A stretch of DNA of 64,000 bases. It comes from Hamiltosporidium tvaerminnensis FI-OER-3-3. Lineage: Eukaryota > Fungi > Microsporidia. A program made the position numbers and the translations under genes. The stretch is taken from the NCBI GenBank assembly GCA_022605425.2, contig CM061251.1, positions 62,001 to 126,000 of the forward strand. The letters run 5' to 3'. Shown piece after piece: positions 44,361-56,883 of the stretch (position 1 is the first letter of the stretch; each line of letters begins with the position of its first letter). Below the pieces are notes generated by a model. The model saw nothing but the letters and a program-made list of their open reading frames with translations, ran no database searches and was not told where the DNA came from.

Positions 44361-45305
44361 AGGCCACGAAACGGAGCTGTGTTCTGTTATATCCAGGATA
44401 GAAATGTATTCTGGGGAGCAGATGGTATGTGTCAACATTGCGGGAAGTCTGGTAAGACTGTAGATCATCTAGCAACTCGATGTGAAAAAATGCTAGGTCA
44501 TGACTACACCAGACGGCATAATGAAGTGGTTAGATGTCTACACTTACTTCTTCTAAATAGATATAATTTTAAGTCTTTAAAACGAATAAGGAGTCACTCA
44601 GTTCAAAAAATTCTTGATAATAAGTATGCAGAGCTAAGAGTGGACACCAGAATTAAGACTGATGTTAAAATTCGGAATAACAGACCGGACATATTTATTT
44701 TAGATAAGAAGAAGAATAAGATAACACTCATTGAAGTAGGAATCACTTCTCAAGATTCACTTCAAATAGTCATAACTAATAAAAGTTGGGAAGTATGACA
44801 TCCTAGCCAATAAGTTGGGTCTTATTTATATGTGTAGTCTTGAGATAATCTCTTTATGTAATGACCTGAGACGGTATTGTGACAAAATACCATAAATCTC
44901 ATCTTAAAAGACTAGAAATACCCATGAATGTAGAGGCATACATTCAGTCTATATTACTTAAGAAGACAGTCGAAACAATTTCCTTTGATCGACGAAGAGG
45001 ACTTGAGTCAGGACAAATGCCGAAGAGAGCTGGGAGAGAGCGTTAATGGGTGTTATTATGAGATCAGAGATGCATGAGGAACCAATACCCCCTTTAAAAG
45101 AAGCGAAAACAGAGGAAGATGGTGCAAAAAATTTACAACCAAAAAATAAAGCACCCCTTATTTCACAAGGAGGAACCACTTTAGAAGAACCGACCAATAA
45201 CATAAATAAATAGTCGGATTTGGAAGAAGAGACAAAAGTGGTTAAAGAGGTAGAAGAAAATATATAAAAATGGTAAAAAAATTTTAACTCAGAATTTTAT
45301 TAAAC
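44361..45305 (+). mobile_element. R4/Dong-like RLE LINE, 5'-truncated copy C (frameshifted)
   Basis: CQHCGKSGKTVDHLATRC (CCHC), YTRRHNEV and RPDIFILD...IEVGIT. The 3' end matches copy B. Confidence 0.92.
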
Positions 45306-48060: not shown

Positions 48061-49614
48061 AGAAGATAGCAGAGGAATTCCAACACGTAGCCTATTTGAA
48101 GAAGTACAGAGCAAACTTATATAAAGAGTTGAAAGACTTTTTCACACTAGATTAAATGCAAAAAATTTATTTTCTGCAATCAATCAACATGCGATCTGTT
48201 AATCAACTATCACATGGAGTACTTCGACTTGAACCGGCTGACTTCTCTAAGTTAGGTAAGGCAGTTCGTGCGGTGTTGGTGAATAATAAGATACATCTTC
48301 GCCCAGGATGTAAAGAGCGTTTATACCTCCCTAAAACAGAACTTGAAAGAGGCCTACATAGTGTTGAGTTGCGAAGCGAACATATGCTTCTGCAACTCTT
48401 GGATTGTCTGGAAAAAAGTAAAGAAATATCAACTAGACTAGCAGCAATCCTCAAGGTGGAGAATAATAATAAACCCCATCTTGCACTAATAAAAGGCTTC
48501 TTAAAAGTAAAGTACAGGTTGGTAGAAGAAGTCACTAAGAAAAGTTTAGAAGCAGCTCAACTTGCAAAACTATATAACGAAATAGAAAAACGAAAACTCC
48601 ATTCAAAGTTATATAATGCAAGGAAAAATGAGCTTTTAAGTGTTAGTGACTCTTCAAGATGGCTAAAGAAAGCGAATATTAGGCCACGAAATGAAGCTGT
48701 GTTCTGCTATATCCAGGATAGAAATGTATTCTGGGGAGCAGATGGTGTATGTCAACATTGCAGGAAGTCTGGTAAGACTGTGGATCATCTAGCAACTCGA
48801 TGTGAAAAAATGCTAGGCCATGATTACACTAGACGGCATAATGAAGTGGTTAGATGCCTACACCTTCTCCTTCTAAATAGATATAAGTTTAAGTCTTCAA
48901 AACGAATAAGGAGCCACTCAGTTCAAGAAATTCTTGATAATGAGTATGCAGAGATAAGAGTGGACACCAGAATTAAAACTGATGTTAAAATTCGGAATAA
49001 CAGACCCGACATATTTATTTTAGATAAGAAGAAGAATAAGATAACACTCATTGAAGTAGGAATCACTTCCCAAGATTCACTTCAAATAGTTGAAACTGAA
49101 AAACTTAGGAAGTATGACCTGCTAGCCAATGAGTTGGGCCTTATTTATAAGTGTAGTGTTGAAATAATCCCTTATGTGATGACCTGGGACGGTATTGTGA
49201 CAAAATACCATAAATCTCAACTTAAAAGACTAGAAACACCCATGAATGTAGAGGCATACATTCAGTCTATATTACTTAAGAAGACAGTCGAAACAATTTC
49301 CTTTGATCGACGAAGAGGACTCGAGTCTGGTCCAAATGCCGAGGAGAGCTTAGAGAGAGCATCATTAAGTGTTATTTTAGGAGCTTAGATGCATAAACAA
49401 CCAATACCTCCTTTAAAGCAAGTAGACAACGAGGAAGATGATGTTAAAACAAAAAATACAAAAAATATTTTACTCCTTATTTTGGATGGTATAACCACAG
49501 CAAAGGAACCAACAACTAATACAAATGAAGAGTTGGAGTTGGAGGAAGAGATATAAGTGGTTGAAATGGTAGAAAGAATTATTTAAAAGAGAAAAATTTG
49601 TTAACCCAGAATTT
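48061..49614 (+). mobile_element. R4/Dong-like RLE LINE, 5'-truncated copy D (post-RT region, CCHC finger, restriction-like endonuclease)
   Basis: ORF 48156-49388: ERLYLPKTELERGL (RLYxPRxxGGRGL-like), CQHC...H...C, RRHNEV, RPD...IEVG and EKLRKY. Confidence 0.93.
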
Positions 49615-49840
49615 TATATTCTTATTATAACTCATATATTACTATTTATATTTTAAATATTAAATCTTTCTAACTTATATATTCCTATTTATCTTCTAAA
49701 CAATATTTCTTATCTCTTATACTTATATTCTTACTTATATATTAAAACGTTATTTTTCTTATAATTAACACACCTTAAAACAGACTTTTATTACTCTATA
49801 TCATTAAAACCCTCTTAAACCAAGCTTATATTACTTCTTA

Positions 49841-50105
49841 TAATTAACACCCCTCTTAAAATACCCTTATTATTTTCTATCCACTTTCCTTTATCTCTAT
49901 CTCTCTATCCTTATAATTAACACCCTCTTAAAATACTCTTATTATTTTCTATCCACTTTCCTTTATCTCTATCTCTCTATCCTTATAATTAACACCCTCT
50001 TAAAATACTCTTATTATTTTCTATCCCCTTCCCCCTTTCCTCTATCCACTTTCCTTTATCTCTCTACCCCACCTATCAATACACTAACACCCCTCCTTAA
50101 ATACC
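49841..50105. repeat. C/T-rich ~72-bp tandem repeat immediately upstream of RPA1
   Basis: AATTAACACCC(C)TCTTAAAATAC...CTATCCACTTTCCTTTATCTCTATC repeated ~3 times. Confidence 0.9.
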
Positions 50106-50136
50106 GTTATATTCCTTTTACTTATACAACCCTCTT

Positions 50137-53100
50137 ATGAACATAAACGGTTTCCCAACGAAAATTTCATTTTCCACATACAACCACCAACAAATAAAAG
50201 AATTATCAAAAATAAAAATAACAACATCCACACCTTTCGACACATTAGGAAATCCAATAAAAAACGGTTTATACGATACATCTTTAGGTCCACTTACCAA
50301 CAAAGAGACATGTACATCATGTCATCTCAATTTCTTTGAATGTCCCGGACACTTCGGATATATTGAGTTACCTATGTGTGTGTATAATCCTATGCATTTC
50401 GATTCATTACTTAAAATTCTTAGAAACTCATGTCTCAATTGCCACACTCTCAAAGAAAAGCTTGTATTCAGCAAAAGAAAAAATATCAATAGTGATATAG
50501 ATAATGGTGAGAATGGTGATATAGACCTTAGTGATACAGAGAATACTAATATAGACTATACTAATATAGACAATACTAATACATACCATACTGATACATA
50601 CCATACTGATACATACCATACTGATACATACCATACTGATACATACCATACTGATACATACCATACTAACAACATACCTCATAATATACCACATAATATA
50701 CCAAACACAAGTATAAATAACAACATACTAAACACAAGTATAAATAACAACATACCACATAATATACCACATAATATACCTCATAATATACCAAACAATA
50801 ATAATCATTTTACTGTTGACCCTCTTAAAATCCTCTTTAAAAACACCCACAAAAAATGTAAAAAATGCAAACAAAAAACCCCACAAATAACCCACCACAA
50901 ACACTTATACATCCTTATAAACAACACCCCTACCCCACTACTCCAAATACAAACCCACATATCAAAATTATACCTTAAAGAAAACCACCACCCCTTTTTA
51001 AATCCAAATATTTTTTTCCTTATAAATATACCAGTAACACCTAATAAATTTAGACCACTTAGTTATATTAACGGTAACACATTTGAACATCCACAAAATA
51101 TAATTTTATCTAAAATTATAAAAGTAAGCGAAGAACTCAAAGAAGGAACAGGTAACAGTGGGGGTATGGATAGGGATATTAGTAACAGTGGAGATATTAG
51201 TAATAGGGATATTAGTACTAGGGATAATAGTACTAGGAATAATAACATAAAAGACACTAAAGACATAATAGACACTAAAGACATAAAAGACATAAAAGAC
51301 ATAATAGACACTAAAGACACTATCACACCCCTTGTATCCTCTCTACAACTCTCTGTTAATATGTATTATGACTCTTCTTGTGTTCGTGTTAAAGGTAAAA
51401 CACTTCTTATAGGTTTAAAACAATTATTAGAAAAAAAAGAAGGTTTATTTCGTAAGAATATAATGGGTAAACGTGTTAATTATGCAGCTAGATCAGTAAT
51501 ATCACCTGATCCATGTTTACATACTAAAGAAATTGGTATTCCTATAGAAATAGCAAGTAAATTAACATTTCCTGAACAAGTAACACCTTATAATATAAAT
51601 AGATTAAAAAAATATATTATTAACGGTAATTCATATCCAGGTGCTGTATTATTAGAAAATAAGAATATAATAACACATTTACAATATATAGGATTAGAAA
51701 AGAGAATAGCACTTAGTAACTCACTATCATATGTGTGTGGTGGTGGTGTGTGTGGTAGTTTTGGTGGTAGTAATAACGGTAATAACGATAACAGTAATAA
51801 CGGTAGTAACTTAGTAAACAACAATAACACAACCAACACAATAGTCTATAGACACTTACTAGATAATGATTATGTCTTAGTAAATAGACAACCTACTCTA
51901 CATAAACCAAGTATAATGTCTCATAGAGTTAAAGTACTTAAATATGAAAAGACACTTCGTATGCATTATGCTAATTGTAACAGTTATAATGCAGATTTTG
52001 ATGGAGATGAAATTAATATACATTTACCACAAGATGTTATATCACAAGTAGAAGCACAGATGTTAAGTTGTACTGATAGTAATTATACTGTATGGACTAA
52101 TGGGTCACCTATAAGAGGACTTGTACAGGATCATGTTATTGTAGGAACAAGGTTGTGTATGAAAGGGGTGTTTTATAGTAAAAGGGAGATGGAGGAGTAT
52201 ATAAGTGAGGTAAGGGGTGGTGATATAGGTGTGGGGGGTGATATAGGTATGGGTGGTGATATAGGTGTGGGTGATATGATATATGGTAGTAGTAATAAAG
52301 ATAGTAATAAAGATAAATATAAAGATAAAGATAAGGATAAAGATAAAGGATATAATGATAACAACCATACTAACAACAATACTAATAACAACACCACTAA
52401 TAATATCACTAGTCTCCTTCTAATTCCTCCTGCTATTCTTAGACCTGTTAGGTTATATACTGGTAAACAACTAATATCTTGTATTTTATTATCTTTAAAT
52501 ATAAAAATAACATATAAAGGTAAATCTAAAGTACCTTTTAATTGTACAGATAAATATACTTTAATAATTAAAGGGTATTTATTAACAGGTGTTATTGATA
52601 AGAATCAATTAGGTTCTGTTAATAAATCATTTATACATTATTGTAGTGTTATTTATAATAAAGAAATATGTAATGAATTATTAAGTGTATTTAGTAGAGT
52701 ATTTAATAGAATTATGGTTAGTGATGGTGTTAGTGTAGGGATTAAGGATATTATGTTGTGTAATGATTTTAAAAGGAGTGATATGATAAAGGTATGTAGA
52801 GAGAGGGGGAGAATAAAGGGTGAGGGTGATTATGAGGGTGGGGGTGATTATGAGGGTGGGGGTGATTATGAGGGTAATGATATTGATTATGAGGGTGGGG
52901 GTGATTATGAGGGTAATGTATTAGAGGGTGATATGATAAAGGGTGTTAGTGAACAGGATATGTTAGAGGGTGTTAGTGATAGTACTAGTAGTTATAAGGG
53001 TGTTAGTGATAAGGATAGTAGTTATAAGGGTGTTAGTGATCTTACATGTAATTTAGAGGGTGATAACACTACTACTAATACTTTACACCCTGTTAACACC

Positions 53101-55341
53101 ACTACTAATACTTTACACCCTGTTAACACCACTACTAATACTTTACACCCTGTTAACACCACTACTAATACTTTACACCCTGTTAACACCACTACTAATA
53201 CTTTACACCCTGTTAACAACACTACTAATAAACAACACCCTGTTAACAACACTACTAATAAACAACACCCCTCCACCAACACCACTCCTCATACAACCAC
53301 CCACATACAAAATAACACTTCTAAAAGACTTAAACCTTTATCACCTATAAATAACCCTTCTGAGTCACAAATTAAAACCCTTATGTCTGAATGTACTACT
53401 ACAATGATAAATGACTTACTACCCTCTTATTTACTAACCCCTTTTCCATATAACACCTTCTATTTAATAATAACCAGTGGTGCTAAAGGTAGTATTGTAA
53501 ATTTAAGTCAAATAAGTGTATTACTAGGACAACAAGAATTAGAAGGTAAAAGAGTAAGTAATATGATAAGTAATAAAACATTACCTTGTTATTCTATAAA
53601 AGATATGATAGAAATAGAAAGTAAAGGATTTATATTTGATAGGTTTTTAACAGGTATTAAAGAAAATATGTATTTTTTTCATTGTATGGCAGGTAGAGAA
53701 GGTCTTATTGATACAGCAGTTAAAACTAGTAAATCAGGATATTTACAAAGATGTTTAGTTAAACATATGGAAGGTGTTAAAGTAGAATATGATATGAGTG
53801 TTAGACAAGGTAAAAAGGTAATACAATTTATATATGGAGATGATGGTATAGACTGTAGTAAATGGAGTCTTATAAGAGAGTATGATATGTACAAAGAGAA
53901 TTGTGGTTATGGTGATAGTAATAGGGTTAGGGATAGTACTAGAGATAGGGATTGGGATAGGGATAGTAATACTATTAGTAATAGTAACCCTTTTAGTATT
54001 TATGGTAGGATATCTACCCCTATATTTAATAATAATAATACTACCCCTATATCTACCCCTATATCTAATAATATATCTACCCCTTTATCTAATAATATAT
54101 CTACCCCTATATCTATGTCTAGTGTTATTAATTATTTCCCTCCTCAACTGTTTATTCCTTCTTTAAAATACTTTGAGGATTTAAAAGTATATTGTGATAA
54201 GAATATAGGTTATAATGGTGATAGTAATAGGGATATAAGTAATAGGGATATAGGTAATAGGGATATAGGTAATAGGGATATAGGTAATAGGGATATAGGT
54301 AATAGGGATATAGGTAATAGGGATATAGGTAATAGGGATATAGGTAATAGGGATATAGGTAATAGGGATAGTATTAGTAATAGGGATATAGGTAATAATA
54401 ATGATTTACGTAATAATGAAATACCTTATAATAATGAAATACCTTATAATAACAGTTTAAGGAATTATAACGATATACCTTTTAATAACCATAATAATAC
54501 TAACACTAATACTACTAATACTAATACCTCTAATACTAATCATAACACTAATCATAACACTAATAATAATACTACTAATACTAATATTCTTGTTAGTTAC
54601 ATTTTAAAAAAATACATTTCAAGTTTGGTTGTAGCTGGTGAGTCAGTAGGTGTATTAGCTGCACAGAGTATAGGTGAACCTTCTACACAAATGACTCTAA
54701 ACACTTTTCATTTAGCAGGTGTAGGTTCTAAAAATGTAACACTTGGAATACCAAGATTACGTGAAATATTAATGGTAGCTTCTAAGAAAATACAGACACC
54801 TGTTATTAGTGTAAGGTATTATAATATTTCTAATGTTTTATTAGAAAGAGTAATGAGTTGTGTTGTTTTAAAGGAATGTGTAGATAGGATTAGTGTTAGT
54901 GAGATAGGTAATAGGATTAGTGTTAATCTAGAGATAAACGGTAGGTATTTTATGGGGGGTATAAGTAGGGGTGGGGAGTGTGGTGGGTGTATTGGTGATA
55001 GTAAGGAGTATGATAGTGGTAGTAGTATTGGTGGTGGTAAGGAGTATGATAATAATACTAATAATATAGATAATACTAATAATATAGATAATACTAATAA
55101 TATAGATAATACTAATAATACTAATAATATAACAGATACTAACACACTAAATACTAATAACACTATAAATACTAACACTATAAATGATAATAACACTAAT
55201 TCTTATGTTGTTACTTCTTCTTCTATTTATAAGGTTGTTAAAGGTAAATATTTAAAGATGGTTGATAAGAGTATAAAGAATCTTTATGGTGTATTAAATA
55301 ATTATAAAGGGAGTTGTATAAAGGTAAGGGGTGGAGGGAGT

Positions 55342-55374
<33 letters not shown>

Positions 55375-56280
55375 AATAGTGGTAGTAGTGAGGGGAGTAG
55401 TGAGGAGAGTAAGGAGATAGATGAAGAATATATAGGAAAGGTAGAAGATAGTAGTGAGGAGGATGAGGGTGAGGATGAGGGTGAGGGTGAAGGTGATAGG
55501 AGAAAGGATAAGAAGAAGGATAAGAGAAAAGATAGGAGAAAGGATAAGAAAAAGGATAAAAAGAAGGATAAGAAAAAGAAGAATAACCATACAAAAAACA
55601 AGAATAACCACCCAAATACAAATACAAAGAATAATATCAGATTCTATTGTATTTCTAACTTAGAAACCTCTTTTGTTGGTAGAATTATAAATTTAAGTTT
55701 TGATTTAAATTTTGATAAAAATATAATTTTATTTCCTATTTTAGAAGATACATTAAATAAAGTGATAGTTAGATGTGTAGAAGGTTTAAGAAATCCTATA
55801 TGTGATAAGAATATATTAAATATAAATGGTAATGATTTATATTCTTTATGTTCAGTAGTAAATATAAATAAAAATATAAAAAATTATAAAAATTTTTTAG
55901 ATATAGAAAAGTCATATTGTAATGATGTATATGGTATGTATAAGATATTAGGAGTTGAAGGGTGTAGAAGTGTATTGGTACGAGAAATAGAGAGTGTTTT
56001 TGATGTTTATGGTATAGGTGTTGATAAGAGACATTTAGGATTAATTTCTGATTATTTGTTGGTAGATGGTGTGTATTCTAGTTTTAGTAGATTTGGGATG
56101 GAAAAAAGTGAATCTATTTTGTTAAAAATGAGTTTTGAGAGTTGTTATTCTGTGTTGAGAGATGCTAGTCATAGAGAGTTAGGGGATTGTTTGGAAGGAC
56201 CGAGTGGTTGTTTAACTGTTGGGTTGCCTGTTAGAAATGGGACAGGGTGTTTTGAGTTGCTTTATGATATGGAAGAGTAA
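50137..56280 (+). CDS. RPA1: DNA-directed RNA polymerase I largest subunit (A190) with multiple low-complexity inserts
   Basis: GLYD..LGP, CPGHFGYIELP, KKEGLFRKNIMGKRVNYAARSVISPDP, NRQPTLHKPSIM, HYANCNSYNADFDGD, HCMAGREGLIDTAVKTS and TQMTLNTFHLAG...NVTLGIPRLREI (Pol I-type signatures). Confidence 0.97.
52920..53275 (+). repeat. In-frame 30-bp tandem array within RPA1 (LEGVSDSTSS-type then LHPVNTTTNT-type units)
   Basis: GGGTG(T/A) at 30-bp spacing up to ~53060, then ACACCCT at 30-bp spacing to ~53270. Confidence 0.95.
54226..54395 (+). repeat. In-frame 15-bp array (AATAGGGATATAGGT; NRDIG) within RPA1
   Basis: About ten near-perfect copies. Confidence 0.95.
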
Positions 56281-56299: not shown

Positions 56300-56630
56300 T
56301 TTTTGTTATGTGTTATGTGTGTTTGTTATGTGTATTTGTTATTTGTTATGTGTGTTTGTTATTTGTTATGTTATTTGTTAGTACTATTAGTAGTTCTTAG
56401 TATTTATTAGTAGTGTTTCTTATTAGTAGTTCTTAGTATTTCTTTATTTTCTTAGTATTTATTGTTAGTTCTTAGTACTAGTAGTTCTTAATACTATGTT
56501 AGTTCTTAGTACTAGTAGTTCTTAATACTATGTTATTTGTTAGTGTTTCTTTATTTTCTTAGTACTATGTTAGTTCTTAGTATTTATTGTTAGTTCTTAG
56601 TACTATGTTATTTGTTAGTGTTTCTTTATT
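56300..56630. repeat. G/T-rich short-period repeats 3' of RPA1
   Basis: TTTGTTATG and TTAGTTCTTAGTA units. Confidence 0.85.
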
Positions 56631-56883
56631 TACTATAAACTTCTATTTTTTATGTTTAAAGGTGTTTCTTTTCTATTCGTTTATATTGAGATTACTATAA
56701 ACTTCTATTTTTTATGTTTAAAGGTGTTTCTTTTCTATTCGTTTATATTGAGATTACTATAAACTTCTATTTTTTATGTTTAAAGGTGTTTCTTTTCTAT
56801 TCGTTTATATTGAGATTACTATAAACTTCTATTTTTTATGTTTAAAGGTGTTTCTTTTCTATTCGTTTATATTGGGATTACTT
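56631..56883. repeat. 62-bp minisatellite x4
   Basis: TACTATAAAC recurs at 56631, 56693, 56755 and 56817. Confidence 0.95.

What the first reader, a model, noticed from the sequence alone, without database searches (positions are those of the whole stretch)
50137..56280. Saw-tooth GC-skew architecture in RPA1: about nine in-frame inserts, all polarised G-rich then C-rich
Seen: low-complexity inserts lie at about 50480-50810, 51140-51330, 51730-51845, 52200-52420, 52790-53330, 53900-54110, 54200-54590, 54950-55210 and 55320-55640. Each begins G-rich (Gly/Asp/Arg/Ser codons) and ends C-rich or G-free (Asn/Thr/His/Pro codons), with a switch near 50560, 51240, 51790, 52350, 53065, 53970, 54440, 55050 and 55585. 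The skew extends into the conserved coding sequence, with G-rich codons before each insert and C-rich codons after. The gene also starts C-rich and ends G-rich. Several conserved blocks between inserts are ~330-400 bp. The frame stays stop-free for 6.1 kb although the inserts are full of out-of-frame TAA, so they are probably translated. TBP, RPA43, ZPR1 and NHA1 lack such inserts. Inference: a position-dependent, strand-symmetric process both seeds repeat expansion and dictates amino-acid composition inside an essential enzyme. Candidates are chromatin-phased mutation or repair, bidirectional resection or synthesis from fixed centres, or selection for mRNA fold-backs. This is the best candidate for an undescribed system in the window.
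Basis: partly seen in the sequence, partly recalled or inferred. Interest (0 to 1): 0.9.

Follow-up and report, generated by a model that had tools for sequence, protein, structure and literature searches.

The report
Polar minisatellites with mutation halos
In a water-flea parasite, short DNA repeats have swollen loops of the essential RNA polymerase I gene, always G-rich first and C-rich second, and the same bias leaks into silent codon positions on either side, which points to a strongly strand-biased repair or mutation process centred on the repeats.

Summary
The gene is RPA1 of Hamiltosporidium tvaerminnensis (2047 aa; 1300-1400 in most other microsporidia). All 9 inserts, and 10 more in RPB1/RPC1, run G-rich to C-rich. 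They are stop-free in frame and present in independent reads, including H. magnivora. The bias extends as a diffuse, mirror-image halo into synonymous sites of conserved flanks (p=2e-8); 16 conserved genes without arrays show no gene-end polarity.

The reading needs correction. There is no fixed period. Inserts sit in loops that vary in length in homologs, so the repeat probably creates the centre. No consistent RNA fold-back was found. The largest insert belongs to a genome-wide 30-bp minisatellite family whose register is kept across the switch (86/94 core pairs), with GGG flipping to CCC as a block. It is one direct array, not fused telomere or foldback arms.

Best model (about 45%): break-prone repeats repaired by bidirectional resection and templated synthesis, filtered by protein selection. 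The mechanism is inferred, not shown. This scan noted the architecture before at other loci of this genome; I found no paper describing it.

The parts
50137..56280 (+). RPA1 (RNA polymerase I largest subunit) ORF, 2047 aa
   Evidence: best PDB hit S. pombe Rpa1, E=1e-220; Pol II/III subunits about 1e-128
51988..52008 (+). Intact NADFDGD catalytic motif
   Evidence: translation
49756..50136 (+). Upstream C-rich array (40- and 72-bp units) carrying the core in reverse orientation (TAACACCC), ending in a CCC motif just before the ATG; weak G-to-C switch near 49600
50137..50478 (+). 5' conserved block with C-rich synonymous halo
50479..50811 (+). Insert 1, switch about 50541 (15-, 12-, 27-bp units)
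51145..51327 (+). Insert 2, switch about 51237
51727..51843 (+). Insert 3, switch about 51806
52204..52413 (+). Insert 4, switch about 52357
52792..53352 (+). Insert 5, switch about 53062; holds the family array
   Evidence: summed contig depth 20-60 times the flanks
52926..53260 (+). 30-bp family array: 12 cores in one register (spacings 15, 27, then nine of 30), six GGG-type then six CCC-type
53902..54111 (+). Insert 6, switch about 53970-54010
54208..54588 (+). Insert 7 (15-bp NRDIG unit x11), switch about 54418
54943..55200 (+). Insert 8, switch about 55048
55315..55632 (+). Insert 9, switch about 55581; acidic/basic stretch of ordinary length for fungal Pol I (131 aa versus 131-135), so a rewritten native loop rather than a true insertion
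   Evidence: identification with the expander loop is from my own knowledge plus coordinates
55633..56280 (+). 3' conserved block with G-rich synonymous halo
56301..56631 (+). Downstream G/T-rich tandem repeats without the octamer core

Best explanation
The inserts are translated, self-propagating minisatellites, and the repeat itself is the centre of the skew. Shown: (1) tandem arrays, some from one genome-wide core-bearing family, occupy tolerant loops; (2) only in-frame, stop-free, hydrophilic readings are used; (3) a diffuse mirror-image substitution bias surrounds them: the strand whose 3' end points at the centre gains G and loses C. Inferred: arrays break or gap often; repair uses 5'-to-3' resection on both sides and homology-templated resynthesis, sometimes from other arrays through the shared core, which spreads the family. 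The strand left single-stranded (top strand on the left, bottom strand on the right) accumulates C loss and A-to-G gain, or is converted that way. Repeated rounds write G|C on the array and a halo of 0.2-1.4 kb on the flanks, and overlapping halos give the saw-tooth. Small population size lets the result persist.
For: Polarity 19/19. Pooled synonymous halo within 180 bp: G at A/G sites 76/211 before versus 28/219 after, p=2e-8; four-fold G:C 14:3 versus 8:20, p=7e-4. The halo is diffuse: raised in all five A/G codon families, little dependence on the next base (p=0.09), and only 32/144 halo G lie in core-like words. It is mirrored: four-fold G36:C7 in G zones, G9:C33 in C zones (zones partly chosen after seeing the data). 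It is absent in 16 array-free conserved genes (p=1.0). The sign matches resection-derived single-switch clusters in yeast, where C is mutated on the left and G on the right of the top strand (PMC6786661). Family: one 11-mer has 1024 copies versus 2 for the control; G-then-C core pairs 94 versus 33; head-to-head inverted cores 58 versus 19. Arrays are unstable and keep polarity: H. magnivora has the flank 52407-52828 identical but a rebuilt array with extra C units on the right. Ku was not found, a weak Spo11-like hit and a Y-family polymerase were. GC-gain tracts were reported in these genes' class, mostly in the possibly sexual species (PMC6944219).
Against: No break, resection or mutation-accumulation data exist here. 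Cytosine deamination alone does not explain G gain. Block GGG/CCC switching with only 3/100 and 2/100 intermediates is not expected from independent point mutations and needs template switching, conversion among units or selection on the core. Only one of the nine RPA1 inserts carries the exact core. The few polarisable SNPs (about 10) are mixed. The C halo after inserts is weak in RPB1/RPC1 alone (p=0.48). Reported recombination rates are very low. A blank Ku search does not prove absence.
Confidence: 0.45

Rival explanations
1. Oriented protein sites and open chromatin: the octamer is bound by a telomere-type or general regulatory factor, arrays act as nucleosome-free, bidirectionally transcribed regions, and the halo is an amplified form of the fungal gene-end skew built on the microsporidian CCC/GGG promoter motif.
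For: The core is conserved across 27-, 30-, 36-39- and 72-77-bp units. GGG/CCC bimodality keeps AGGGT on one strand or the other. The upstream array ends at CCC before the ATG, like the motif in PMC2803860. Same sign as in PMC3315797 and PMC555766. A weak 5' C bias exists in two outgroup RPA1 genes.
Against: Array-free transcribed genes show no synonymous polarity. Halo changes are not motif-forming. Eight of nine RPA1 inserts lack the exact core yet are fully polarised.
Confidence: 0.25
2. Template-switch or quasi-palindrome mutagenesis at stalled forks: arrays stall replication from either direction, and nascent-strand slippage and fold-back flip GGG to CCC and copy arms, with error-prone restart writing the halo.
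For: The core context is a quasi-palindrome with a 3-nt loop; intermediates are rare; insert 5 folds better than arm-wise shuffles (z -2.8); the yeast leading strand is C- and A-rich, the same sign as the right arms (PMC3459929).
Against: Fold-back alone does not favour G|C over C|G. The flip also occurs in a context without a perfect hairpin. Origin skews are about 9% over 20 kb, not near saturation over 0.6 kb.
Confidence: 0.15
3. Telomerase-like end extension and head-to-head fusion, or a decayed foldback/MITE element with inverted arms.
For: The geometry equals two chromosome ends; the core is the telomeric AGGGTTA plus two bases; TAGGG and AGGGT are enriched in left arms (19 versus 5.7, 22 versus 5.7); 58 inverted core pairs exist.
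Against: TTAGGG is not enriched (1 versus 1.5). 86/94 G-to-C core pairs keep an exact 30-bp direct register. Neither model explains synonymous halos.
Confidence: 0.07
4. RNA- or protein-level selection: mRNA hairpins, non-canonical splicing or ribosome bypass of the inserts, or a preferred charged-then-polar loop order.
For: G arm then C arm can pair. Dictyocoela's independent expansions lean the same way weakly (7 of 8, boundaries by eye). No RNA data were available.
Against: No consistent excess folding; frame kept with zero stops; the same polarity occurs in non-coding flanks and at synonymous sites.
Confidence: 0.08

Closest known systems
Core-sharing minisatellites linked to recombination hotspots (Jeffreys core; PRDM9-driven instability) - from my own knowledge
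   Same: Dispersed tandem repeats with different units around one G-rich core, strand asymmetry, variant-unit mosaics, polar instability.
   Different: Here in frame in essential genes, polarity flips inside one array, and a synonymous halo surrounds it. No break-targeting protein was identified.
Single-switch mutation clusters from bidirectional resection (PMC6786661)
   Same: Same sign and same point symmetry: C lost on the left, G lost on the right of the top strand.
   Different: Those are one-off APOBEC events over many kb; here it is a fixed, near-saturated composition over 0.2-1.4 kb with G/C gain as well as loss.
Opposite GC skews at 5' and 3' gene ends in fungi (PMC3315797; PMC555766)
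   Same: C-rich start, G-rich end, affects four-fold sites and amino acids, mechanism unknown.
   Different: Here confined to array-bearing genes in my sample, far stronger, and repeated inside the ORF.
Asn-rich in-frame expansions in Hamiltosporidium MCM proteins (PMC6944219)
   Same: Same genus; in-frame low-complexity expansions splitting conserved domains.
   Different: That paper left open inteins versus loops; my term searches of it and of PMC10542269 and PMC12449221 found no account of polarity, core motif or halo.
Rickettsia palindromic elements; Plasmodium low-complexity inserts - from my own knowledge
   Same: Repeat-derived peptides tolerated in surface loops of conserved enzymes in a drift-dominated parasite.
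   Different: RPEs are discrete conserved hairpins; these are direct arrays without a consistent hairpin. I know of no such polarity in Plasmodium inserts (not tested).
Replication-origin and Candida centromere skew jumps (PMC3459929)
   Same: Sharp jump with gradual return; yeast leading strand C/A-rich gives the same sign.
   Different: 9% over about 20 kb (origins) or 74% over about 3 kb (centromeres, not replication-linked), against a near full swing every 0.4-0.9 kb here.

Membership tests
RNA polymerase I largest subunit | Closest to Pol I rather than Pol II/III; intact NADFDGD; no heptad tail | tested here: met
   RPB1 and RPC1 are separate loci
Core-sharing minisatellite family | Tandem units of 10-60 bp at many loci sharing a short core | tested here: met
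   (3669 core-pattern matches versus 273 control)
Core-sharing minisatellite family | Unit number and composition vary between lineages | tested here: met
   H. magnivora array rebuilt, flank identical
Core-sharing minisatellite family | Association with break hotspots and a core-binding protein | not testable with these tools
   no break map or binding data
Resection-derived single-switch signature | Top strand loses C left of the centre and G right of it | tested here: met
   left arms G491:C24, right arms G38:C280 (split chosen at the switch)
Resection-derived single-switch signature | Asymmetry in new mutations, dependent on resection nucleases | tested here: inconclusive
   about 10 polarisable SNPs, mixed; genetics not possible
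Fungal gene-end GC skew | C-biased 5' end and G-biased 3' end at synonymous sites | tested here: met
   RPA1 4:24 versus 22:0; DER1 2:18 versus 27:6
Fungal gene-end GC skew | Visible as an average over ordinary genes | tested here: not met
   16 array-free genes G:C 134:145 versus 146:156, p=1.0; small sample
Interstitial telomere fusion | Arms made of the organism's telomere repeat TTAGGG | tested here: not met
   1 observed versus 1.5 expected; telomere repeat read
Foldback / MITE / palindromic element | Right arm is a register-specific inverted copy of the left arm | tested here: not met
   best arms about 72% complementary; direct 30-bp register in 86/94 pairs; no consistent fold-back
Foldback / MITE / palindromic element | Target-site duplication and empty sites | not tested
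   no close outgroup without inserts was found
Introns | Free of frame constraint | tested here: not met
   0 in-frame stops versus about 71 expected; known introns average 28 bp (PMC10542269)
Introns | Removed from mRNA | not testable with these tools
   no RNA run holds the stretch; runs laid were DNA contigs
Inteins | Hint splicing domain with conserved end residues | not tested
   no Hint profile was run; inserts are pure tandem repeats by inspection
Replication-origin skew | Small amplitude, inter-origin length scale of tens of kb | tested here: not met

The most novel reading that the evidence does not exclude
The octamer family is a selfish, enzyme-free repeat system that recruits a host telomere-type or break-targeting protein, provokes cuts at its own arrays, and spreads by templated repair, while the repair imposes a telomere-like strand polarity strong enough to rewrite codons and amino acids of core enzymes genome-wide.
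Probability: 0.2. Interest if true: 0.88.

Novelty: new variant of a known kind. Interest (0 to 1): 0.66.

Why it matters
If the halo is written by repair at the repeats, this genome is a natural, near-saturated record of repeat-induced strand-asymmetric mutagenesis at many loci. Two open questions become testable with existing population reads: what causes the C-start/G-end skew of fungal genes, and whether low-complexity inserts mutate their own flanks. It also shows mutation bias setting the amino-acid content of an essential polymerase, and it explains why short-read assemblies break inside core genes here.

Tried and rejected
Assembly artefact: rejected; four independent read sets carry the inserts and an H. 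magnivora contig has insert 5; no single contig spans the whole stretch, and that 1.2-kb contig turns into unrelated sequence after the array, probably a mis-join. Fixed periodicity: rejected (spacing 409-947 bp, blocks 87-1818 bp). mRNA fold-back: not supported. Telomere fusion and foldback arms: rejected for the 30-bp family. General transcription skew: not seen in array-free genes. Motif-directed halo: not supported. Loop micro-inversion as sole cause of GGG/CCC: insufficient, the flip occurs without a perfect hairpin. The Fisher values at optimised switch points are inflated and were replaced by the quarter test. No structure prediction was run.
Full report
Identity. The genome has 21,638,905 bases in 17 contigs and TTAGGG telomeres, matching the Hamiltosporidium tvaerminnensis assembly (PMC10542269); an 81%-identical fragment is labelled H. 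magnivora. The ORF 50137-56280 is RPA1: best solved relatives are Pol I largest subunits (E 1e-220 to 1e-199, against about 1e-128 for Pol II/III), with an intact NADFDGD. It is 2047 aa; most other microsporidian orthologs are 1300-1400 aa, Dictyocoela 1603.

Observation. Nine low-complexity stretches total about 857 codons. Each starts G-rich and ends C-rich or G-free. A test that does not optimise the split gives 19/19 for RPA1, RPB1 and RPC1 (p=4e-6), also at third positions. There are no in-frame stops, against 52 and 283 in the other frames and about 71 expected. Most repeat periods inside the ORF are multiples of three, while flanking arrays include 40, 62, 77 and 79 bp. Translation is therefore likely but not shown, as no RNA run was available. 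Four independent DNA read sets, two labelled as a second organism that I take to be H. magnivora, carry the inserts, with most differences in or beside them.

Where the inserts sit. Intervals between conserved anchors that hold an insert vary by 21-148 aa among 16 homologs; most other intervals vary by 0-13 (p=6e-4). Dictyocoela has expanded several of the same loops on its own. Switch spacing is 409-947 bp and block length is 87-1818 bp over three genes. The positions are thus set by protein tolerance. Since the skew centres coincide with them, I infer that the repeat creates the centre, and not that a pre-existing lattice seeds the repeat. Insert 9 is of normal fungal length and is a rewritten native loop.

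The halo. In conserved flanks within 180 bp, pooled over three genes: G at A/G two-fold sites 76/211 before versus 28/219 after (p=2e-8); C at C/T sites 18/219 versus 30/190 (p=0.02); four-fold G:C 14:3 versus 8:20 (p=7e-4). RPA1 alone is significant in all three classes; RPB1 plus RPC1 alone only for A/G. Val, Arg and Asp are commoner before inserts; Thr, Leu and Lys after. In RPB1 a C halo runs about 1.4 kb in from the start and a G halo about 0.8 kb up to the heptad tail. The halo is diffuse across codon families and mostly not core-forming. It is mirrored, including an avoidance of creating GpC on both sides (3/62 versus 64/205, p=8e-6; 5/29 versus 103/288, p=0.06); these zones were partly chosen after seeing the data. 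Sixteen conserved array-free genes show no gene-end polarity (p=1.0), while RPA1 and DER1 show it strongly. Outgroup RPA1 genes lack the core and the saw-tooth, though two have a mild 5' C bias.

The repeat family. Insert 5 draws contigs at 20-60 times flank depth. One 11-mer from it occurs 1024 times against 2 for the control. The same core, GGGTGTTA, occurs in RPB1 and RPC1 inserts in the same reading frame, and in non-coding arrays of other periods, reversed upstream of genes and forward downstream. In RPA1 twelve cores lie in one register, six G-type then six C-type. Genome-wide, 86 of 94 adjacent G-then-C pairs are exactly 30 bp apart, and the opposite order occurs 33 times (p=6e-8 if independent). 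Inverted cores face head-to-head 58 times and tail-to-tail 19 times. The triplet is GGG or CCC in 97/100 and 98/100 listed matches in two contexts. So a coding insert of this family is one direct array whose units grade from G-type to C-type. Each unit type has three stop-free readings, and only the hydrophilic one is used; this explains the sense orientation without an RNA intermediate. The other eight RPA1 inserts use different short units and lack the exact core, so the core is not needed for polarity.

Mechanism. Shown: arrays, frame selection, loop positions, polarity, halo, instability between species. Inferred: the cause. A process centred on the array, symmetric under strand exchange and acting on single bases over hundreds of bp fits bidirectional 5'-to-3' resection, whose yeast signature has this sign (PMC6786661). 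Ku was not found, a weak Spo11-like match and one Y-family polymerase were; GC-gain tracts were reported in Hamiltosporidium single-copy genes, 111 of 141 in the possibly sexual isolate (PMC6944219), and may be these halos (not checked). Templated repair from other arrays would spread the core. The weak points are G gain, which needs A-to-G change or biased conversion, and the block flip of the triplet, which needs template switching, conversion or selection on a binding site. I give this 0.45. An oriented binding-site and open-chromatin model gets 0.25: it explains the conserved core and the likeness to the microsporidian CCC/GGG start motif (PMC2803860) and the fungal gene-end skew (PMC3315797), but not the diffuse halo or its absence at ordinary genes. 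Fork-stalling template switching gets 0.15, telomerase fusion or foldback elements 0.07, RNA or protein selection 0.08; folding of inserts against arm-wise shuffles gave z from -2.8 to +3.8.

Novelty. The ingredients are known kinds: core-sharing minisatellites, in-frame parasite inserts, strand-coordinated mutation around breaks, fungal gene-end skew. Their combination at this strength is not described in the papers I could search; PMC6944219 mentions only Asn-rich MCM expansions. The scan has noted the architecture at several other loci of this genome, so RPA1 is an example, not a unique site.

Noticed in passing
L004:5553-5742 (RPC1, minus strand): The RPC1 reading frame is interrupted near its first insert (N-terminal ORF L004:5742-6230 separate from the main frame); probably an assembly indel, not checked with reads.
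   Followed up: partly
L005:1541-2100 (RPB1 3' end): The native heptad tail has C-rich third positions and is preceded by an 0.8-kb G halo, so an ancient repeat may also act as a centre.
   Followed up: partly
L014:1773-3775: MCM5 is split into two ORFs (intron or frameshift) and has no polarised inserts.
   Followed up: no
window:29789-32554: 921-aa Thr-rich repeat protein with no Pfam match; holds six copies of the core in reverse orientation in frame, with C-rich start and G-rich end.
   Followed up: partly
L024:359-5170: Dictyocoela muelleri RPA1 has independent Asn/Asp-rich expansions in several of the same loops; 7 of 8 lean G-first, weakly, with no core motif.
   Followed up: partly
L021:5693-8203: DER1 is bracketed by 38/77-bp core arrays upstream (reversed) and 36-39-bp arrays downstream, with a G-type array in its C-terminal tail.
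   Followed up: partly
window:56630-57549: Near-perfect 62-, 77- and 79-bp tandem repeats downstream of RPA1.
   Followed up: no
window:18760-19212 and 44379-45060: Fragments of a dispersed repeat family (also in L010, L012, L020), likely a retroelement, that carry the core octamer once in a fixed context.
   Followed up: no
window:50878, 51078, 51079: Three of about ten polarisable SNPs are A-to-C in a C-rich zone; too few to interpret.
   Followed up: no
G000:C1:1171105-1171159 and C1:1267827-1267881: An identical 55-bp core-flanked segment occurs in inverted orientation about 97 kb apart.
   Followed up: no
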